A DNA stretch of 64,000 bases from Oikopleura dioica (Eukaryota > Animalia > Chordata), in the NCBI GenBank assembly GCA_907165135.1, contig OU015566.1, positions 6,138,001-6,202,000 on the forward strand. Reading direction: 5' to 3'. The notes under the pieces are model-generated. The model searched no databases and was not told where the DNA came from. It was given only the letters and a program-made list of their open reading frames with translations. Positions 19,012-33,392 of the stretch are shown piece by piece. Position 1 is the stretch's first letter. Each line of letters opens with the position of its first letter. A program made the translations under genes and the position numbers.

Positions 19012-19338
19012 AATTGTCTTCCTCAAAAAGTTCCCCGATTGAAACATTATCTTTGCACTTATTATTTTTATTGATTGAAACATTACCATTTTATGCCTGT
19101 CGAAACTATTTGTACATAACCTTCCGAAAAAACACCGGTGCCACCATTTTTGCCAGACCTGACTTCAACATTTTCTCGTTTTGCTTCAAATTGTTCCTGA
19201 TTGAACTTCACTTATTCTGAAGCCAATTATCTCCACTTAAAACCTTCCGAGTTTCCTCTACTCAACTCCTCTTTGAAGGAAACTCCCACAATAAAAAGAC
19301 AAATGAAATCTTATCTTATTTCATGTTTTGCCAGTAGA

Positions 19339-19837
19339 ATGTTGTGTGAGTTGAAGAGAGGGAAGATTTGCGTCAATTTGATACGGCGAAGTAGTCTCAA
19401 AACAAGGTACTCTCTCCCTCCTCGGCAACCAAAGTCAGTCAATTATCTTCCTTTCAGCAATCCTATGATCAGAAGCACCCCAGAGCCGACGAAAATCAAG
19501 GCGCATCAAATCGCCACGCTGAACCGCTTCAATCTCCGTCCATATCCTCAAAAGTACCCGGCGCTGATCGTCCGCGGCGATGGAAGTACTTATCGAGTTT
19601 GGAGCACTGAAGAGCCCCAGGAAATTGTCAGATTTCCAATTGATGTTTCCAACATGTCGGAAATGGATAGAACGCGTCTTTTGAGGTTGAAACTTACAGA
19701 AATTTCGCTTTTACAGTCATTTTAGTAAACGATACGGAAAACAAGTTAAAACTCGAGTTGTTCAAAGCATTAATGTCGAAGACGAAGATGATCAAGAAGA
19801 AGAACTTGGCGATTTTTCGGACTATGACCAGCGCTAA
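19339..19837 (+). CDS. mrpl55: Mitochondrial ribosomal protein L55 (mL55/bL31m)-like
   Basis: IATLNRFNLRPYPQKYPALIVRGDGSTYRVWSTEEPQEIVRFPID resembles the MRPL55 core (YPVLLVKQDGST...EP...MPID); basic N-terminal targeting-like peptide; two short introns; acidic C-terminus. Confidence 0.75.
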
Positions 19838-21764: not shown

Positions 21765-22413
21765 AATTTGGTCGCTTTTCTGGAAAGGACTCTATTTTAA
21801 AATTTCGCTCGAGCTAGGGCGGCCTAAATCTTCAGATGATGTTGCCTGAGGAACTGTTGGTTTCTGATTGGCTGATTGCCCCCCTAAAAGTACCTCAAAA
21901 TGCCCAGGACCTCTAAGTATTCGCCCACCCTAGCAGCTTGTGGAAACCTTCTTAAAATAGCAAAAAAGATTTGACTTCAAAAAGTCAGGATTCAGTCGCC
22001 AGGGATCGCCAAATCCTTTCCGATTTATTGAGAGACGCTGGAGCCAAGAACTCAAATTTCCAACTCTCAGCCGCTGATCGACAAGCTGTGAACGAGCGAA
22101 AGGAACGGTTTCTTTCCAAGCCAGAATTGAAGCTCTTGAGAAAATTCGGGAAATGAAACCCTTGAAAAAGCAATGGGAAAATAGCCAACGACTCAAACGT
22201 GAGAAAGAACACCGAAACAACCATCAATGGTGACATCTGTAAATTGTTAAAATACTGCCTTTCAATATCTCTTTTCTCATTTTAAGATGAGATTCTTCAC
22301 CTCATAAAAGACATGTTCTTTTCCATCCAATTTTCTGCCTTTCACAAATGTGTATTTGAAATTTCATTTTCAATTTTCAGTTTCAGAAAAATCGAGATCG
22401 AAAATCTTCCTTG

Positions 22414-24270
22414 ATGGCAGTTCGGAAGCGTGAAAATGCTACTCAAAAGAGCAAAAAGCTCGTAAAAAGAGAGAAAATTGAAGATGACTCTACTCCTTCC
22501 AGTCCTAGTTACGGCAAATACTCCGTCTTGGTGCTCGTTATTCTTTCGCTTTTCCTCTTGAACCGATCCGAACCGGCTCCGAAAGCAGAGTCTACGAGTC
22601 GTTTTCAATCCGGCCCAGCGATCGTGACAACTTGGAAAGGCGTTTCCCGGGAGTGGGCCGAAAGTTGGATCAGTTATCACGCCGCTCTTGGATTCACTCG
22701 ACTTTTTATCTTCTGGGACTCGCCGGAAAACGATAAAGAAACAATCGCCTGGCTTGATTCCGACCCTGCGTATTCCTGGGTCGTTGATAATTACTCCCCC
22801 GACGATGAATACAAAAAGCGCTTTTGGATGCCAAACGAGGAAAGCGACGACTTTGAGCAGTGGGTTCTGCCTGCTTACGGCGTTCACGCGGAAACGGAAA
22901 TTACGGCGAGACAGAGCTTGTTCGCCGCTCGAGCAGCTCAAATTGGACTCAAAGAAGGCGTTTCATGGTTGTTGCACATTGACGCGGACGAGCTCTTCTG
23001 GGTTGATGAGAAGGAAGCGAGTGGATCAGCAAAGAGAATTTTTGAAACGCTTTCGGATAAGAGGTTTACTCATGCGAGCTTTATGAACGACGAGATTTTG
23101 CCGGAGACGCCGAATTTTGAAAATGATCAGGTTCAGGGATTGAAATTATTTTCCGTTAAAATTTTTTCAAAGCTTCCAAAAACACCATTTCATCAACGAA
23201 CGCTTTTCAAACGCAGCTCCTCAGTCACTTTCGATCAGCAATCGCGCTCCGTCGCTCAAGAATGGAAAGCCGAGCATGATGGAGTCAATTTTTTCATGGG
23301 CTACATGTGCGGAAAAGGAGCCATCAATCTTCAAGAGTGGAATCTCAGAAATCCAGGAGCGGCGGTCGTGCCACAACATGTCGTTCGTTTTGCGTAAGTT
23401 TCATTTTCTCTTTCCCTTTATTAATCAAAATACAAGCTCTGATTATCGAAACCTCGGCCTCATCACGCTCCTGAAACAACTCGGCATGTCTTACGAGCAC
23501 TTCGATGTGCCAGTTACGAATTATCAATCAGCAGCGCATTTTTACAAAGCAAGAATCATCCACTACATCAACTCGGACTTGGACTCAGCCAGATCGAAGT
23601 TTGGATTCCGGGAAAAGTTCGACTCCAAGATTTTCGATGCCAAACTCGCCACTGCTGAAGAAAGGGAGAGATTTGATTTGTGGAAGGCGAACTGGACTGA
23701 AGAAGAAGGAATGCCGAGTGAAGTTTATTACAATAACATGTGGAAGGCTGTCCAGGTTCGTTTGAAATGGATACTGTGGGGATCACCATGTTGTCTCTTA
23801 TTGGCCCACGTTGATAAAACTTGCTTCTGATTAGACCACAAACCCTATAAATCGAGACACGCTTGATTAAACCCCCTAAACCCGCTAAGAATTTTTCATT
23901 TTCAAAAGTTCTTTGCTGACAAAAATTTAAGGAGGAAAAGAAAACCGGCAAGAACCAAGCAGAACTGTACTACAAGAAAACCTCCCTCGTCAACCCGAAA
24001 AAGCTCAACCGCTATCTACAAACGGGCGCAATTTACCGCAACACTGACATCCGCGACTACCTTCTCAAACTTTCCAAAGAGCTCCATTCCTCTTCAACTC
24101 CCGGAGAAGTCCTGAAAGAACACAACTCTCGAAAATCCTCATCGAAGCACAAATATCACGGCTGCTCAAGAGGGCCTCATTTTCAATGCGATCACAAGGT
24201 CAGTTTTGAATTTATTAGAAGTGTTGAAGTCGGACGATGTTTTCTCTTGAAAATTTCTTGTCGTCTTTGA
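22414..24270 (+). CDS. Type II membrane glycosyltransferase, KOBITO1/ELD1-like (GT2/GT92-related fold)
   Basis: TM segment YSVLVLVILSLFLL; WISYHAALGFTRLFIFWD; RQSL; SWLLHIDADELF (DxD); PFHQRTLFK; NFFMGYMCGKGA; IIHYINSD; LYYKKTSLV...LQTGAIYR. These follow the motif order I recall for plant KOB1. Introns at 23131-23172, ~23395-23436 and ~23756-23929. 3' end approximate. Confidence 0.75.
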
Positions 24271-24304
24271 TCGGGTCTCTTCCTTGATTTCAATACTAAA
24301 ATTT

Positions 24305-25075
24305 TTAATAATCAACTGACCCGAGTCCTACTGGGCATCGTTTCGCCGATTTCAGTAACTCGTTCGCGCATCGCTCGCACATTTGGTGCCCGCAAACCGA
24401 AATGCAGCACTGATACTTGTCCGTCAAATTGTAAGGCTCGTTGCACTTCCCGCACATTGGCCTCGTCGTCAGCCTTTGAAGCTCTCGAGTTTCGTTGTCG
24501 ATCGATTTTTTAAGAGTTTTTGCTTGTCTTGTTTTTTCGCTTAGAAATGCTTTCAGCTCATTTATTTCTTGCTGGAGCAAGTTTTGTTTTTTAGAGCATT
24601 CTTGATTTCGATTGAGTCGGGCCTGGGAGTTGTGCGTGTTGCTTTCTGCTTCGTTCAGAATGCACTGCTTTATGTCAGTTGTCTTGAAAAGGGGCGAGTT
24701 ATCGATATTTTAAAGGCCTTAGATCGCGTTTCTTACTATTCTAGGAAGGCCTTGATTTATTAAATTCGCCCCAAGCCATAATGTCCTTGAAATGATCCCT
24801 TTTCCCCCATCGCTCAAAATGCTTGTTTCCTTTTTCAAAAGCTCGATTATTTCATTGGAAACGCTTTTCAGCTCTTCAAGAGCTGCCATTTCCGCGGTTC
24901 TCTCCTTTATCTCACTTTCAATCGTAGAATTTTCATCCTTCAACTCTTCGTAGCGCCGGAAATCGCTGAAAAGAGCCTCTTTTTTCTTCTCTATCGAGTT
25001 GATGCTCGAATCAAAGACCGACTCGATCTCATTCTCGCTCAGAGAAACAATGTCAAAAGAAACTGTTCGCGACAT
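24305..25075 (-). CDS. Coiled-coil + C-terminal RING-finger protein
   Basis: CGKCNEPYNLTDKYQCCISVCGHQMCERCANELLKSAKRCP (C3HC4-like), preceded by coiled-coil exons; final exon not resolved. Confidence 0.75.
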
Positions 25076-25604
25076 TGAAGATTTTTTCGATTAAAAATGA
25101 AATCTGCCGGCCGATTTAGAAATTAGAAAAAGTGCTGATTAAAATATTCAGGATTGCTGTTTCCACTTGCGATCTCCCATGTTCACTTTCGAAAAACGAC
25201 TGCTTGGCTACATCAGATACGACAGTTTCGAATGGTGGAAGAAGGGCATCACCTGGCCGCCTCGTTCCCAGCACTAGAACTTTTAAAAACCTAAAAAAGA
25301 GCTGCTTTATCCGTTTATTACACATTTTTCTTTGCCAAAAATGATTGTGCAATCACTTCGACTTTCTGTATTTCTGTAATGCTAAAAAATAGTTCTAAAT
25401 AAAAACTCACTAGTTCGGAAAACCTAAAAGTACGAATCTTCTTTTCAATAAGATAGATTGGTGCACCTCTGGTTTATAATTATTAATTATAAATTTTTAA
25501 ATAAAAATTAAAATAAAAAGGAAGTGACGTGAAGGCCGTTTTTTTTAAATTCTTTGAAAATATTTCTTTCTCGTCAGGGTTGTTGTTTTTTGGTAGAACA
25601 TAGA

Positions 25605-27460
25605 TTATTCTTGAGGGAGAATGGTGATATTCCATCTGATGTAGTACTCAGTGCCAGGCGCGTCGGGGTTTTCGCTCTTTCGGGCTTCTTGCTCTTCTTC
25701 TGTCTCGCCGCATTTAATCTCACCGTCGTTTTCATTTGGCTCTATGTTCTTCATGGAGTAGAGCACTCGACCATCTTGCTGGATGCAGTCGGCATTGGCA
25801 CGTAGAGGAATGGTTTTGTCTGAAAAGAAAATGAGAAATACGCAAGAATCAAGCACAACCGTTTTTGGTGATCCAAAGTTTCCACTCGTCTCTTTTGCTG
25901 TTGTCAAAACTGGCGATTTTGAGCTTGTATTCTCCCTCGGCTACTTCGTATTCTTGAGTGCGCATGAATTTCAAATTGAAGCTCTCGACTCCGTCCGAAA
26001 TCGCTTTCAAAATCTTCTTCGACTGAGCGTCCGAAAGACCGCCGGAAAGACGAATGTCTTTGCTATCGAATCCATAGTAGCTACCGTAGCCTTCTTTCCA
26101 AATGTCAGGTCGGATGAATTCAGCGCCTTGAGTTGTCGCTTCAATTCTGCGTTTTCGTCAGCGAGGGTGTCATTGACAACTTCCAGAGTCTTTGTTTCGT
26201 CGAGTGAGAACTTCATGTCAGCCGGCTCAACTCGGTTTTTCAGCTGTTTGACGAGGCTTTTAATCGACCCGTGGTTCATCAAAAGAGAAGCGTTCCCAAC
26301 TCGATCTTCAAGATTTTCCTTCAGGCAGCAGTTTACGAGAGCTTCCATTTCTGCTTGAGGAAGCTTTGACGGAGTCCGTTTGTTTTGAATAATGTTGTTC
26401 CAAGTAGCCGGAGGATGTTCGCCTGCGAAGGGATTTTCAAACGTACAAAGCATGTGGAAAATAACGCCCATCGACCAGATATCGCGTTTGAAAGTCACGT
26501 TCCCAGTGTCAAGCCGTTTGAAAGTTTCGGGAGGATAGAAGTAATCGCTGGGTCCTCCAGTCATTCCGCCAGAGCAAATGTGCAGGTCGAGGATTTTTAT
26601 CTAAAACCAATAAAGACCAAACATAAGAATCATTTGCTTGCCTTTTTTCCGTCAGCAGAAATGAGGATGTTTTCAGTGTTGAGTTCTTTGTGAACTTGCT
26701 TTTTCTTTTTGTGCAAGTAGTCTTAGAAAGGTTATGTTTCGAAGCAAATCAAGAAAGGCCTACCCATTGCGAAGACAATTTGAGCAGCAAGTCGGAGAGC
26801 ATCGTTTTCCGACCAGATGCCGTTTCCGCTTGTTCCACTGCCGCTACTTTTCAGGCTGCTCTTTAGCGTGCTTTTGAGGGTGCTTTTCATGACTTCACCA
26901 TCATCGTCATCTTCTCCCGCAGCTTCTTCCTTCTCTCCTTCTTCGTCAGTATCGTCGTCGTCAGAGGGACTCTCAACTAATGCTCAATTACCAATGTAGC
27001 TTTAAAAACTAAATCTTACGATCTTTCTTCATATTCGCTAGAAATTGCCCGAGATCTCCTCCAGAAAGATATTCAAGAATCAATCCTCTGTATGGAACGC
27101 TATTTGGACCGGTAAAAGAAACATCGTCGAGCAGTTTGACGATGAATTCATTGTTCATCTGCTTCAGAAGCTTGACTTCATCCTCGGTATCGGATTTGAC
27201 CTTTTCGCTCAGAAGGGCAATCGCTTTCAGTATCTTTAGCTCCCCAGCTAACAAAAAGTGTCAAAAAAGGAAAAAGAATTAATCTACCGAAGGTCTTATC
27301 CTCCACAATCCAGTAGAGTGTTGATTCTCCTAACTTCGCCTGCCTCAGTTCTCTTTATAAACATTCAAAGACTACTGCTAGAACTGCTATTCGATTTTGC
27401 CTGTGAATCTTTCCTGATACATTTGTAGCGATTGCTCGGGCCGAACTGAAAATTTTCCAT
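25605..27460 (-). CDS. Protein-kinase-fold protein, predicted pseudokinase (NEK-like scaffold)
   Basis: LKILKAI (subdomain II), EVKLLKQMNNEFIVKL, LILEYLSGGDL, HKELNTENILI (in place of HRDLKPEN), IKILDLH (in place of DFG), YFYPPE, DIWSMGVI; acidic/Ser-Gly insert at ~26760-26990. Confidence 0.8.
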
Positions 27461-27899: not shown

Positions 27900-30800
27900 T
27901 TTCTTGAGAGAGTTTCTTCATCCGCTCAGCCAGAAATATTGACAGCTGATATCTGTTCTAGCGGCGTGAATCATGAAGTTGGTTCTCCAGTGATAATCAC
28001 GTGAGCTTAATGAAAGAAAAAAAAATAATTTCAGACTGAAAATTCAGCTCTCCAAACTATCCAAACAACTACAATAATTATCATGATTGCAAAGAAGCGT
28101 TTAACTCAACGACAGATGGGCTCATGTTTGTGCTCCTTGATTTTAACGTTGAACACGCCTATGATTGGGTGCATTTCTTGGATTCAAGTGGCAGTACTTT
28201 TTTGACGCTCACGGTTAGTGTATTCAACAATTCTTATTGTCCGAAAGCTAAAATTAAATTAAAGGGCGTCCAAAATCGAGCCCCGATCTGGTTTCAGATG
28301 CCAATAGTAAAACTTCGATTTACAAGTGACGTGGATACCACGCGAACTGGATTTCAATTTCAAGTCAATAGTCTCATAAACGGTAAATTTGAATATTTTG
28401 CGGCTCATGGGAGAACATTTACCCCGCACCCCCTTGTTGCAAATTTCTCGGAAAAAAAATTCCCCCGCGAGTTGCACAGAAGGCTGCAAAGAGCTAAGAG
28501 TTAAATTCAAGAACCCGGCTACCAATGCTTCAATTGCGACTGCTTGGACGGTCTCATGAAAGTGGGCTATATTTGCGAGGAGATTCTTGAGTGCGAAGAC
28601 GAAATTAACCCTGTCTGCGGGACGAATTCGATTTGTAAGGACGTTTTTACGAGTTTTGAATGCTCTTGCGGCGCTGGTTTTATTCCAGCGACTTGCCAAG
28701 GGTACCAGGGCTGCGCAAATTTTGAATGTATCGACGTCGATGAGTGCGTTCATGATCCTTGCGTCGAGAATGCGATTTGTGAAAACACCATCGGAAGCTA
28801 TACCTGTGAATGTATTGACGGCCTCGTGATGATCGAAGACATCTGCGAAGAAATTTTCGAATGCGAAGAAAAAATCGACCCTGTCTGCGGGAAAAATTCC
28901 ATTTGCAAAGACATTTTTGCGAGCTTTGAGTGCACTTGCGCCGCTGGTTTTCTCGAGGACACTTGCCAAGGCCATGAAAACTGTGCGACTTTCACTTGTT
29001 TCGACGATGATGAGTGTACTGCTGATCCCTGCGCGGAGAATATGCACTGCAACAATACCCTTGGCAGTTTTGACTGCTTTTGTTTCGAAGGAATGGAAGA
29101 AATTGGTGGAACTTGTGTCGATATTGATGAGTGTTCTGCAATTATCAATCCATGCAGAAGCCATTCTGCCTGCAAGAACACGCACAGGAGCTATGAATGT
29201 CACTGCAATGCTGGTTTTTCTGGTGGTTTTGCCGGGGATCAAGCAATTGCTTGGACTTCAAATGCGATGATATCGATGAATGCTCTATTGGAGATCATCT
29301 GTGCGATGAGTTCTGCACAAACACTGTTGGGAACTACAGTTGTTCTTGCGATGTTACCATGCGTCAAGTGGGGCTGTTTAACTGCGAGGCTGTGATTTTT
29401 AACGGGCAAGATTTATTAAATATGGACGAAGACGACTTGAAGATATTTTTGGAGAATGAGCTCATTGTCATCGAAGAGAAGATTGAAAGCGCATTGAATG
29501 ACTCAGAAGCTGCGGCGGAAACGATCAGCGAGGTCTCAGCGAGAACAGAGAGTTTGTTATCGAACTTGCTCGCGCCAAAGGTTTCAAATGATGATTTTTT
29601 GAATAAAATCTCCTCTTCCAGAATCGATTTACTCCTAGAGTCGAGTGAAAACATTGTTAACATAAGAAAAGGTCTTGTTCATCTTCTTGAGTCCATTTCC
29701 GCCGAGACAAAGTCCACTGATTTTCTCACGATTGGAGAAGACATTTCGACTGGGGTTATTTTGGGAACGTCGAGAACAAAGGATGACCCAATTATCGCTG
29801 AAATAAAAGCCAACCCGTTTATTTACTCTGAAGACGATTTGCGACTTGGCAATAATGTTCTCTATTCAGCCAATTTTGATGGCCAAGCATTGGTCATCTT
29901 CGATCAAGAAACTCAAACAATAGAAAAAGAGATTTTAGCTGGACGAGGCGAAGTGCTCCGCTTCAATCTTGAAAACAAGGAAGACTTTTTCCTCTTCTTT
30001 GATGTTGACGAAAATCATCAATTTCAAATATTTGTCGATTTCTGGTACGAGCCTGACCCAAAACTCATCTCTTACCGGCATCACGTGATCTTGCCGGTTT
30101 TCAAAAACGAGTCGGAAATATCATCGACGTTCTGCTTCGGAGATCGATGCACTGGGGAACCATTCGGCCTCCATTTCGATGAGAAAGAAATCAACCTGTG
30201 TTTTTCAAGGCAAAAGTGCTCAATTTTCGTTCTTCTCCAATCTTTCTCGACCGAAAAGATGAGTGTCAAAATCTCCACACTCTCTGGTTCCTGTGTTACC
30301 GATAAATTTCAAAGCTGGAATAGACAGTCTTGCTCTGTAAGAAGCGATTCAAGTCGCGGAAAAATCAAATGCTCTTGTGAAATTGAAAGCAGAGACAAGA
30401 TAACCTCAAGGTTTGGTCAATACGGGACGATTGCAAATTACAGCTCACTAATTGTGAATGAAGTTCTAACAGTCAGTGTCAAGCTATTTCCGATTTTATT
30501 CGTTATTTTCTGGATAATATTGATTCTCCGAGCCCGAAGTCTCGACCGACTGCAGGAGAAAGCGAGTATTCTGCACCCACCCGCGATTTTAGGAGACTTC
30601 AGGACAGCCAATTATTATATAATCGAGATCGACACGAGATTTTCTTTCAGTCGCGCTCCAAAGATGCTCAAAATCGAGATCTTCTACGACGACCTTTTGG
30701 GTAATTCGGACCGAGTTGATTTTTACCTGGGCTCAAGAACGAAGCGACTCTTCGAAAACGGACGCTCGACATTGTTCCTTTTGAAGAGTCCAATGATGAA

Positions 30801-33392
30801 AATAAAGAGTCTGAAGCTGTCCGTCGACTTTCATTCAGAACTAGAAGCAACTTTTTTCCCACGAAAAATCTCATTCTTCATAGTCCATTCCTTTCCCGAG
30901 GAATATTCGAAAGGACGGATTAAGGACATCGCATGGCATGAGTCCACTGTTACTTTCGATTTGGAAGATGAAATTTCAGTCATGAAAGCAGATCGCATTA
31001 CTTCAACAGAAGTCCACCTAGAATCTCCTCCTTTTCAACATGAAAGTCTTTTCGAGCGATTTTTAACGAACAATCATTGGCTCGGACCAGCGGCATCGAA
31101 AAGACAGACCGAAATTTCAAACTCTTCCAGGGTTATTTTCGCGTTTTTACCTCTTCTTTTATCGATCTTTTTGTCCTTTTTGCTTTTTCAGAATACAAAT
31201 TGGATTGCGGAAAAAATCGTTTCTCCGAAATTTCTTGTCTTTGGGCCAGTTACTTTGTCGACTCTTCAACTGCCTGTTTTATCGTTGGAGATTTTATTAT
31301 TGACTGTCCAATTTTTAAGTCGGCCTTTATTGTTAAAAATTCAAAGAAAATTAATTTTCGTGGCCAATTTATTTATATTTATTGGTTTAATTTCTATGGC
31401 TACGATTATACTTGTTCGACTTTCCTCCCTTAGAAAAGGTTCATTTCTTTGTAAATTTTCATTCAATTACAACAAATTCGAACCAAATTCTAGTGAAATC
31501 AATTTTGAGTTATGGATGACGACGAGCTATTTCTTCATATTTGCTGAAGTCTTCTTGAATCCACTCATCGTCTCTTTTGTGATCAAAAGAACCGAAGCGA
31601 ACAAGCAGGAGTTCATCTTTCTCAGGAAATCAGAAGAATACGAACAAGGAAAGTACACAGAAGCGACAAAATCCTTGCTTGACCGAGCAGCGATAACAAA
31701 ACTTGTCTACGCAGCAAAGCACAAATTGGACCTTACCATCACTCTTCGACGCTTTTTCTCTTATTTCTTCCTGACACTGAGTCTTTACGGGCTTTCAACA
31801 GTCATCGTCCCGGCAGAAAAATACGATGTCGACAAAAATTTTCGCGATAAAATTTCCATTTTCCCGGGAAAAACTCAACTCAATGTGGAATCTGCTTGGA
31901 ATCTAATTCAAGAAGAGCTTTTGCCGCTCATCCACGCTGGCAACAGTAGCAATGGGGAAATTCCAAGTCGAAAAGATAAAGCTTTTGCTCGAGACAGCGT
32001 CAATTTCCGACTTGGGCCTTCGACTCTCGAGCAGCATCGAGATCAGTGCGGCTTTTTCACAAAATATTGGCAATTTCAACCAAACGCGACGCAAAGGACG
32101 ATGCAAAAAGTGCTAAAATCGCCACTTTTAGCTTCCTACTTTTCCGAAACCCAATCGTCCCTTTCTTCCGACATTTTTCTCCAGGCTCCAAATAGACTTT
32201 CCTCGAACAGTTGCAAGTTTACCGCCGACCTCGGCACCTCAAAAGAAAGTGCTGAATACATGATCAATTATTTACAAGAAAACGCTTGGTTCGATCAGGA
32301 GACCAAGCTTCTCATCTTCGAACAAAGCTTTTTGAACATGAATATCAACTCTTTTCTTAAACTTCGGGTCGTTTTTGAATTCGTCGATGGAGGCGCGATA
32401 CTCCCAACTCTGGCAAGGCTTAAATACTAGAATAGTTGGTGATCATAAGAATCGAGATCTTGAAGGAAAGCCTTCTGAAGAATATTCAGCAGCTCAAAAA
32501 CACCGAGTTCTCTGACTACACCTTTTCTCTCAGCCTCACGATTTTCGTCGCCCTCCTTTTGACTGAAACAATAGAAATAATCAAAACCATGAAAAATCGA
32601 CAATGGAGCTTCTTATCATTCTATAAAACTATTTTATTCGCCCTAGATGTTACCATTCTCGTTTTTATCGTCCTGAGAGCGCATTACCTCTCCGAAGGAA
32701 TTGCAAATTTCGTTCTCGATCCAAAAGGCTCCCCAAAATTTTCCTCCGTTTTCTTGGTGCAGCATCACTTTCTTTCTCTCGTGGCGATTTCTTCGTTCCT
32801 CCACAGTTTCTTGCTTATTCATATTTTGTCGACTTTGAATGCCGTTGGACGTAAGTGATTTTGGCTGCTTCCTTTTGAATCGTTTTTAGAGTATAAAAGC
32901 ATCCTGAAACAGCTGAAAAAAAGCCTAGCTCCGTTTTTAATGATGCTTTTGCCGATTCAATTTGGACTTTCTTCCGTCATTTTTATCATTTTCCGCTATT
33001 CTTCCTTTATTTTCCGGTCCCTTTTGAAGACTTTTTTCATCATCATCTGGCAAGGATATTTGAAACCTTCAGGTAAAAGCGACCAAAGTAACTCATTTCT
33101 ATGTTGGCTAGATATGAGGATAGAAGTTGATCAACTGTCAGATCCGAATTGGCGGTTTTTGGCGCAATCAATCTATTTCGCCTTGAATCTGTCGATGATG
33201 TATTTGACGATGAATGTGATTGTGGCCATCATTTGCGACACAAACCAAAGCGTCAGGGAAGAGGAACTCGAACTCGACTGGCTCAGTCTCGTCGCCAACA
33301 AATTGAAAAAACTGAAGCTGCGGAAAGATTTTTTCTCGGCAAAAAAGTTTTCTGGTCAGAGAAGAACGAAATATGAAAAAGATCCCGGCTGA
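27900..33392 (+). CDS. Polycystin-1-like (PKD1L/REJ-type) protein: CUB, Ca-binding EGF repeats, GPS, TM, PLAT, multi-TM channel region
   Basis: FSSPNYPNNY...FTSD...GF (CUB); repeated DIDEC EGF units; WNRQSC...IKCSC (GPS); YYIIEIDT PLAT start; ENAWFDQETKLLIFE polycystin channel motif. One frameshift at 29227-29230; 5' end not resolved. Confidence 0.82.

What the first reader, a model, noticed from the sequence alone, without database searches (positions are those of the whole stretch)
22414..24270. KOBITO1-like glycosyltransferase in a probable cellulose-making animal
Seen: a type II TM protein with WISYH..LGF..LFIF, RQSL, WLLHIDADEL, PF...TLFK, NFFMGYMCGKGA, IIHY and LYY...L..G.IYR in that order. 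From recall, these parallel Arabidopsis KOB1/ELD1 (WMFYHKVIG, KQSL, WILHLDTDEL, PF..VSMFK, NYFLTYGNGKS, VLHY). Known: KOB1 is needed for normal cellulose deposition in plants, and tunicates are the only animals that make cellulose, using a horizontally acquired CesA. Inference: a possibly horizontally acquired, now intron-bearing accessory factor for tunic or house polysaccharide synthesis.
Basis: partly seen in the sequence, partly recalled or inferred. Interest (0 to 1): 0.8.

Follow-up and report, generated by a model that had tools for sequence, protein, structure and literature searches.

The report
KOBITO-superfamily glycosyltransferase gene in a larvacean
This is a real, intact five-exon animal gene for a membrane-anchored sugar-transferring enzyme that is only distantly related to the plant protein KOBITO1, is shared patchily with jellyfish and a few protists, and has no demonstrated link to cellulose.

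Summary
The gene is longer than reported. It has five exons (22414-25277, 549 aa), including a hidden in-frame 42-nt intron. A 953-nt last intron holds an antisense RING-like gene. A transcript-like contig from a sister lineage is collinear across all four junctions.

The protein is a type II membrane GT-A glycosyltransferase. It passes Pfam Glyco_tranf_2_4, keeps an HxDxDE metal motif, and its ortholog's model is closest to poplar GalS1 (GT92, Z 16.5).

Real KOB1 blocks taken from a paper align to the same motifs. However, KOB1 scores 94.6 bits against the short, mostly bacterial branch of the family and only 29.7 bits against the branch holding this gene. So the two proteins share a superfamily; this gene is not a KOB1 ortholog.

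The gene's own branch is a fully supported "long-form" clade: larvaceans, scyphozoan jellyfish, Amoebidium and Chromera. No member of this clade could be assigned to an ascidian.

Larvacean sequences group with Chromera rather than with jellyfish, and animal monophyly is rejected (AU p 0.006-0.011). Horizontal transfer is therefore plausible but unproven. The cellulose role is untested, and only one phyletic hint favours it.

The parts
22414..23130 (+). Exon 1 (aa 1-239): cytosolic basic N-terminus, signal-anchor, first half of the GT-A domain
   Evidence: ORF and translation. N-terminus matches orthologs P0005/P0006. Exon end set by a 14-aa gap against P0008 and a GT at 23131.
22519..22560 (+). 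Predicted transmembrane signal-anchor (aa 36-49, YSVLVLVILSLFLL)
   Evidence: This is the highest hydropathy window in the protein. The ortholog P0005 is modelled with a helix at 28-60.
22660..23016 (+). Pfam Glyco_tranf_2_4 (PF13704) match, aa 83-201
   Evidence: E 4.3e-9, 37.2 bits, cut-off 27.5.
22975..22992 (+). H188-I-D190-A-D192-E193, the HxDxDE (DxD-type) motif, inferred to bind metal and nucleotide-sugar
   Evidence: H, D, D and E are invariant in 75 family members and are kept in the window protein. The motif aligns with HLDTDE of KOB1.
23131..23172 (+). Intron 1, 42 nt, GT-AG, in frame with no stop, so it reads through as ORF
   Evidence: P0008 and other orthologs lack exactly these 14 aa. 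The mRNA-like contig L003 skips it.
23173..23393 (+). Exon 2 (aa 240-313), containing PFHQRTLFK and the Y283-MC-G286-K287-G motif (23302-23319)
   Evidence: Y, G and K are nearly invariant across the family.
23394..23436 (+). Intron 2, 43 nt, GTAAGT...AG
23437..23755 (+). Exon 3 (aa 313-419), containing I354-H355-Y356 (H at 23561-23563) and the helical region after the GT-A core
   Evidence: The HY motif is nearly invariant.
23756..23931 (+). Intron 3, 176 nt, GT-AG
   Evidence: L003 joins 23755/23932 to within 2 nt.
23932..24198 (+). Exon 4 (aa 420-508), containing LYYKK...LQTGAIYR and the first Cys residues of the C-terminal module (from 24163)
24199..25151 (+). Intron 4, 953 nt, GTCAGT...AG, which hosts an antisense gene.
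   Evidence: Orthologs continue CDH[KR]|DCCFHLR.... L003 joins 24198/25152 to within 2 nt.
25152..25277 (+). Exon 5 (aa 509-549 plus TAG): DCCFHLRSPMFTFEKRLLGYIRYDSFEWWKKG, the Cys/Trp-rich C-terminal module typical of the long-form clade
   Evidence: L003 runs on into the 3' UTR up to 25370.
24305..25075 (-). Nested antisense gene inside intron 4: a coiled-coil ORF (24719-25075) and a Cys-rich RING-like ORF (24305-24580). It is not part of the glycosyltransferase.
   Evidence: ORFs. zf-RING_5 scores 27.1 bits against a cut-off of 27.9.

Best explanation
The locus is a single-copy, intact, five-exon larvacean gene. It encodes a 549-aa type II membrane protein: a short basic cytosolic tail, one signal-anchor, and a lumenal GT-A glycosyltransferase domain.

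Inferred mechanism: the HxDxDE motif, together with the later conserved His (HY), holds a divalent metal and a nucleotide-sugar. A conserved acidic residue (N225.E227) and the Y..GK loop contribute to acceptor or phosphate handling. The enzyme then adds a sugar to a glycan or glycoprotein in the ER or Golgi. By fold it most resembles GT92 beta-1,4-galactosyltransferases, so an inverting hexosyl (possibly galactosyl) transfer is the best guess.

The gene belongs to a distinct long-form subfamily, marked by an extra four-Cys/WW C-terminal module, within the family that also contains plant KOBITO1 and many ~330-aa bacterial proteins. It is not a KOB1 ortholog.

Shown here: gene structure, family membership, conserved motifs, fold of the ortholog, and phylogenetic placement. 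Inferred: catalysis, sugar specificity, location and substrate.
For: Gene model:
- All splice sites are GT-AG.
- P0008 (88% identical) is collinear across all junctions.
- Its 1289-nt contig L003 lacks all four introns and runs into the 3' UTR.

Family and fold:
- PF13704 is above its cut-off in this protein and in every relative tested.
- All 26 invariant or nearly invariant family positions are kept.
- The AF2 model of ortholog P0005 has pLDDT 91.2 and pTM 0.87.
- The best solved match is GalS1 (GT92): Z 16.5, 243 residues, rmsd 3.9, against the next best Z of 10.3; all the other listed matches are glycosyltransferases, mostly of the GT-A fold.

Secretory location:
- A hydrophobic anchor and four C-terminal Cys residues.
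- Clade member P0055 has a signal peptide and ends in KDEL.

Genuinely an animal gene:
- Neighbours are MRPL55, a protein kinase, and an EGF/polycystin gene.
- Introns are tiny and the last one carries a nested gene.

Subfamily:
- A 19-row clade with 100/100 support and a long stem.
- KOB1 blocks score 29.7 bits against this clade's HMM and 94.6 bits against the short-form HMM.
Against: - No enzymatic, localisation or expression data exist for this gene.
- RNA reads from runs with the same species label gave only 5 reads at 95-99% identity, which is no test. No RNA holder was listed.
- The Pfam GT92 model itself is not matched (E 0.18). The TM-scores to GalS1 are low (0.27/0.36), so sugar specificity cannot be transferred from it.
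- The structure model is of a 60%-identical ortholog, not of the window protein.
- KOB1 itself has never been shown to be catalytically active. The review PMC4001042 calls it glycosyltransferase-like, with no clear functional link yet shown.
Confidence: 0.75

Rival explanations
1. One reading: a KOB1-type accessory factor, horizontally acquired, that works with the tunicate cellulose synthase in making the house or tunic polysaccharide.
For: - It shares a family with KOB1.
- The nearest shape match in the ESM Atlas is a streptophyte cluster named 'glycosyltransferase-like At2g41451' (TM 0.55/0.58, 344 residues).
- Larvacean sequences group with Chromera velia (95/98 and 95/99), and the Chromera wall is mostly cellulosic (PMC9293442).
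- Animal sequences are not monophyletic.
- The oikoplastic epithelium expresses many glycosylation genes (bioRxiv 10.64898/2026.03.31.715263).
Against: - KOB1 lies on the short-form side of a 100/100 split and is about three times closer in bits to the short-form HMM, which is built mostly from bacterial proteins.
- Close homologs occur in scyphozoan jellyfish and Amoebidium. To my knowledge (untested here), neither makes cellulose.
- No expression data tie the gene to cesA2-positive cells.
- KOB1's own role in cellulose synthesis is indirect and unresolved.
Confidence: 0.1
2. A catalytically dead 'glycosyltransferase-like' protein that acts as a scaffold, lectin or regulator in the secretory pathway.
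For: - KOB1, the only studied relative, has no demonstrated activity.
- The conserved C-terminal Cys/WW module could be a binding module.
Against: - The HxDxDE, N.E, Y..GK and HY positions are invariant or nearly so across 75 sequences from bacteria to animals, and all are kept here. This is the conservation pattern expected of an active site.
Confidence: 0.12
3. The gene is not the animal's own, but contamination from prey or a symbiont in the assembly.
For: - Its nearest identified non-larvacean relative is an alga-like alveolate.
Against: - It has four GT-AG introns, two of them 42-43 nt.
- An antisense gene is nested in an intron.
- The flanking genes are typical animal genes (MRPL55, polycystin/EGF) on the same contig.
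- Orthologs form a clade of several larvacean-like lineages at 57-88% identity.
Confidence: 0.01

Closest known systems
Arabidopsis KOBITO1 / ELD1 / ABI8 (At3g08550), plus its green-algal homologs
   Same: - Type II membrane topology with a GT-A/DUF23-like domain (PMC4001042).
- Collinear motif blocks: [KR]QSL...W[IL]LH[IL]D[AT]DEL, N[YF]F..Y..GK and [VI][LI]HY.
- KOB1 blocks hit this gene's clade HMM at 29.7 bits.
   Different: - KOB1 is much closer to the ~330-aa short-form proteins: 94.6 bits, and up to 60% identity in block 1 against 37% to the window protein.
- It lies outside the long-form clade.
- Only 138 KOB1 residues could be compared, so whether KOB1 has the C-terminal Cys/WW module is unknown.
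- No functional link to cellulose is shown for this gene.
GT92 beta-1,4-galactosyltransferases, solved example poplar GalS1 (PDB 8D3T/8D3Z)
   Same: - Best solved structural match: Z 16.5, rmsd 3.9 A, 243 residues, well above the other GT-A enzymes at Z about 10.
- GT-A fold with a DxD-type motif.
- Chromera clade member P0053 is auto-named 'Glycosyltransferase family 92 protein'.
   Different: - Pfam PF01697 is not matched (11.8 bits against a cut-off of 23).
- About 11% identity, and TM-scores of 0.27/0.36.
- Donor and acceptor cannot be inferred from GalS1.
Pfam PF13704 (Glyco_tranf_2_4) short-form proteins, mostly bacterial, about 310-400 aa
   Same: - Same domain and the same invariant residues. 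These proteins also carry the helical extension ending in FYR....L..G.L.RI, which matches LYYKK...L..G.IYR here.
- The window protein scores 179 bits against their HMM.
   Different: - They have no membrane anchor and no C-terminal Cys/WW module.
- They are separated from the long-form clade by a stem of about 1 change per site with 100/100 support.
Streptophyte 'glycosyltransferase-like At2g41451' cluster (ESM Atlas)
   Same: - Nearest Atlas cluster by shape, similar in length (524 aa), aligned over residues 62-532 of the ortholog model (TM 0.55/0.58).
- From my own recollection, untested here, At2g41451 is a KOB1 paralog.
   Different: - No sequence from this cluster could be retrieved, so its place in the tree is unknown.

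Membership tests
Pfam PF13704 Glyco_tranf_2_4 (GT-A clan) | Score above the curated gathering threshold | tested here: met
   37.2 bits against 27.5, E 4.3e-9, aa 83-201. Nine relatives also match the model, all above the cut-off except P0005 (26.5 bits against 27.5).
GT-A fold metal-dependent glycosyltransferases | Rossmann-like GT-A fold with a DxD-type motif | tested here: met
   D190-A-D192 sits within the invariant HxDxDE motif. The AF2 model of the 60%-identical ortholog (pLDDT 91) matches GT-A enzymes only; the best is GalS1 at Z 16.5. The fold was tested on the ortholog, not on the window protein.
GT-A fold metal-dependent glycosyltransferases | Nucleotide-sugar-dependent transfer activity | not testable with these tools
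   Needs an enzyme assay.
CAZy GT92 / Pfam PF01697 (formerly DUF23) | Sequence match to the family model above threshold | tested here: not met
   11.8 bits against a cut-off of 23, E 0.18.
CAZy GT92 / Pfam PF01697 (formerly DUF23) | Structural similarity to a solved GT92 enzyme | tested here: inconclusive
   GalS1 is the clear top hit (Z 16.5), but TM-scores are 0.27/0.36 and identity is about 11%.
KOBITO1 family (plants and green algae) | Type II membrane topology with a lumenal or extracellular GT-A domain | tested here: met
   One hydrophobic segment at aa 36-49 after a basic N-terminus. KOB1 topology is taken from PMC4001042.
KOBITO1 family (plants and green algae) | The conserved KOB1 blocks align collinearly with significant score | tested here: met
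   The three KOB1 blocks from PMC10684911 Suppl. Fig. 2 align in order. blastp gives 33.1 bits and 37% identity in block 1. The long-form HMM gives 29.7 bits, E 1.3e-11 at Z=1.
KOBITO1 family (plants and green algae) | KOB1 is the closest relative (orthology or sister relation) | tested here: not met
   KOB1 scores 94.6 bits against the short-form HMM and 29.7 against the long-form HMM. Its best pairwise hits are short-form proteins. KOB1 lies on the other side of a 100/100 split. A position as sister to the whole long-form clade is not rejected (AU p 0.114).
KOBITO1 family (plants and green algae) | Required for normal cellulose deposition | not testable with these tools
   Needs knock-down with cellulose staining. 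The phyletic pattern gives little support.

The most novel reading that the evidence does not exclude
An ancestor of larvaceans acquired this long-form KOBITO-superfamily glycosyltransferase from a cellulose-walled, alveolate-like microbial eukaryote (Chromera type), independently of the jellyfish copy. It was then recruited in the oikoplastic epithelium to build or decorate the polysaccharide scaffold of the house. That would make it a second transferred polysaccharide-synthesis gene in tunicates, alongside CesA and the GH6 gene that has also been proposed as a transfer.
Probability: 0.1. Interest if true: 0.75.

Novelty: new variant of a known kind. Interest (0 to 1): 0.35.

Why it matters
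KOBITO1 is described as plant-specific (PMC4001042), and its biochemical function has been open since 2002. This work shows that it belongs to a broad family with about 1,900 clusters, mostly bacterial, in the exhaustive search.

A separate membrane-anchored branch with an extra C-terminal module exists in a few animals and protists. That gives experimentally tractable relatives for working out what this family transfers.

For tunicate biology, the gene is a candidate eukaryote-to-animal transfer, or else a striking case of differential loss. It occurs in a lineage already known for acquiring polysaccharide-synthesis genes.

For annotation, the locus shows two traps: an in-frame 42-nt intron that reads as ORF, and a terminal exon hidden behind an intron that contains another gene.

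Tried and rejected
- **RNA reads.** Reads from four RNA runs carrying the same species label were laid on 22000-25600. Only 5 reads mapped, at 95-99% identity, so this gave no test of splicing or expression in this lineage. Neither run search listed an RNA holder.
- **Retrieving full KOB1 with the word-index search.** An alignment query (A2) returned 4 proteins and was swamped by unrelated candidates. A motif-dense region of P0068 returned 9 bacterial-type proteins and no plant protein. Full-length KOB1 could therefore not be compared. Only the 138 residues printed in a paper's supplement were used.
- **Atlas feature searches.** These gave GT92-annotated algal clusters and bacterial GT2 clusters, but no cluster named KOBITO.
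- **PDB sequence search with the family profile.** No hits.
- **NCBIfam.** No hits.
- **AU test on the 103-row set.** It did not finish. It was replaced by 29-32-row sets.
- **Neighbour genes of the P0011 and P0057 loci.** No Pfam hits, so those organisms remain unnamed.
- **Contamination.** Considered and rejected; see the rival explanations.
- **Kong 2012 and Pagant 2002.** Neither paper is held in the library.

Full report
**Observation**

The start codon is supported by the N-termini of orthologs (MAVRKR in P0006, MGARKR in P0005). One hydrophobic segment (aa 36-49) follows a basic N-terminus, as expected for a type II membrane protein.

**Gene model**

- Orthologs end in CDH[KR]DCCFHLR[ST]PMFTFEKRL.GY.R..FEWW. 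That sequence is encoded at 25152-25277, behind a 953-nt GT-AG intron.
- The 14 residues VQGLKLFSVKIFSK inside the long first ORF are missing from every ortholog. They correspond exactly to an in-frame 42-nt GT-AG intron at 23131-23172.
- The final model has five exons: 22414-23130, 23173-23393, 23437-23755, 23932-24198 and 25152-25277. It encodes 549 aa.
- P0008, 88% identical, is collinear over aa 157-549.
- Its 1289-nt JGI contig (L003) aligns to the window in blocks that skip all four introns and run on into the 3' UTR to 25370. In a sister lineage the mRNA is therefore spliced as predicted.
- For this exact lineage I have no RNA evidence. Four RNA runs with the same species label gave 5 reads at 95-99% identity, and no RNA holder was listed.

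**Context**

The gene is single-copy in the window. Upstream lies a mitochondrial ribosomal protein L55 gene. Downstream lie a protein kinase fragment on the minus strand and an EGF/polycystin gene.

Intron 4 holds two minus-strand ORFs, one coiled-coil and one RING-like (zf-RING_5, 27.1 bits against a cut-off of 27.9). This looks like a nested gene.

The tiny introns and the marine metagenome and metatranscriptome relatives fit that, but I did not test the species name.

**What the protein is**

- Pfam Glyco_tranf_2_4 (PF13704) is matched above threshold; GT92 (PF01697) is not.
- An exhaustive profile search found 1,873 clusters at E<=0.001. In a 75-sequence alignment, W, H, D, D, E (WxxHxDxDE) and a later E are invariant. 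R-Q, N.E, F....FK, Y..GK and HY are nearly invariant. All are kept in the window protein.
- AlphaFold2 on ortholog P0005 (about 60% identical) gave pLDDT 91.2 and pTM 0.87. The model has a transmembrane helix, a GT-A core and a helical/beta C-terminal part.
- The best solved match is poplar galactan synthase GalS1, a GT92 enzyme: Foldseek E 9.5e-7, and Z 16.5 over 243 residues against Z about 10 for the next GT-A enzymes.
- I infer a metal- and nucleotide-sugar-dependent lumenal glycosyltransferase. GT92-like hexosyl (possibly galactosyl) transfer is the best guess for specificity, and it is only a guess.
- Clade member P0055 has a signal peptide and ends in KDEL. That supports a location in the secretory pathway.

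**Relation to KOBITO1**

No search returned a KOB1 sequence. Suppl. Fig. 2 of PMC10684911 prints three Arabidopsis KOB1 blocks: residues 208-253, 300-345 and 346-391.

I joined the blocks with X for the missing 46 residues and compared them with the family.

| Comparison | Result |
|---|---|
| blastp, best short-form proteins | up to 58.9 bits overall; up to 60% identity in block 1 |
| blastp, window protein | 33.1 bits, 37% identity in block 1 |
| KOB1 vs short-form HMM | 94.6 bits |
| KOB1 vs long-form HMM | 29.7 bits |

In trees, KOB1 sits with short-form proteins, on the other side of a 100/100 split from this gene's clade. A position as sister to the whole clade is not rejected (AU p 0.114), because only 138 residues are available.

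A review describes KOB1 as a type II protein with a GT-A domain and DUF23 (PMC4001042). That is the same architecture.

By shape, the nearest ESM Atlas cluster is a streptophyte family named 'glycosyltransferase-like At2g41451' (TM 0.55/0.58 over residues 62-532). From memory this is a KOB1 paralog, but I could not test that.

Conclusion: the two proteins share a superfamily, and this gene is not a KOB1 ortholog.

**Distribution and origin**

The gene's own branch is a 19-row clade with 100/100 support and a stem of about 1 change per site. All its full-length members share the C-terminal Cys/WW module. The clade holds:

- several larvacean-like lineages;
- the scyphozoan jellyfish Sanderia and Rhopilema, plus unnamed relatives;
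- the ichthyosporean Amoebidium;
- the alveolate Chromera;
- a few unnamed environmental sequences.

One jellyfish-like copy is intronless on a 1.4-Mb contig. No member could be assigned to an ascidian or any other animal.

Larvaceans group with Chromera and P0013 (95/98, and 95/99 after the two longest branches were removed). A clade of larvaceans plus jellyfish is rejected (AU p 0.011 and 0.006). This fits either transfer between eukaryotes or old paralogs with heavy loss. I put transfer at roughly even odds.

Larvaceans evolve fast, so model artefacts are not fully excluded.

**Cellulose**

The only hint in favour is that Chromera has a mostly cellulosic wall (PMC9293442) and that house-making cells express many glycosylation genes. 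Against it stand the jellyfish and Amoebidium homologs, the lack of any identified ascidian homolog, and the unresolved biochemistry of KOB1 itself. I give the cellulose-accessory reading about 0.1.

**Verdict**

This is a real and correctly spotted gene whose borders needed correction. It is an uncharacterised long-form branch of the KOBITO/PF13704 glycosyltransferase family. The interest is moderate and rests on the patchy, non-species-tree distribution rather than on any shown link to cellulose.

Noticed in passing
window 24305-25075 (- strand): Two antisense ORFs lie inside intron 4 of the glycosyltransferase gene. One is a 118-aa coiled-coil ORF and the other a 91-aa Cys-rich ORF with a near-threshold RING finger match (zf-RING_5, 27.1 bits against 27.9). 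They probably form one nested two-exon gene.
   Followed up: partly
window 23131-23172: A 42-nt GT-AG intron is in frame and free of stops, so exons 1 and 2 read as one 328-aa ORF. ORF-based gene calls would add 14 false residues.
   Followed up: yes
window 19201-19725 (+), 26007-26564 (-), 28544-32430 (+): The neighbouring genes are mitochondrial ribosomal protein L55, a protein kinase C-terminal fragment, and an EGF-Ca/polycystin-domain gene. This is ordinary animal gene content around the glycosyltransferase.
   Followed up: partly
P0055 (643 aa, Logan contig): A long-form clade member has an N-terminal signal peptide instead of a signal-anchor and ends in KDEL. It is apparently a soluble ER-resident version of the enzyme.
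   Followed up: no
P0180 and P0143 (979 and 989 aa): In these proteins the short-form glycosyltransferase domain (residues 1 to about 350) is fused to a C-terminal region. In P0180 that region reads like a GH13 amylosucrase/alpha-amylase domain. I judged this by eye and did not scan it.
   Followed up: no
ESM Atlas fold search, row 3: A 353-member cluster of about 306-aa proteins from Nucleocytoviricota (giant viruses) matches the model (TM 0.73 by the row). Giant viruses carry relatives of this family and could be vehicles for transfer between eukaryotes.
   Followed up: no
L001 3001-4617 (P0011, ENA ERZ25066852, 1.43-Mb contig): The jellyfish-type homolog is a single uninterrupted 538-aa ORF on a large contig. 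The larvacean gene, by contrast, has four introns.
   Followed up: partly
P0077 (Arcella intermedia, 474 aa): A testate amoeba has a type II membrane version that groups outside the long-form clade, yet its C-terminus carries a Cys-rich stretch (C..C....DCC) reminiscent of the long-form module.
   Followed up: no
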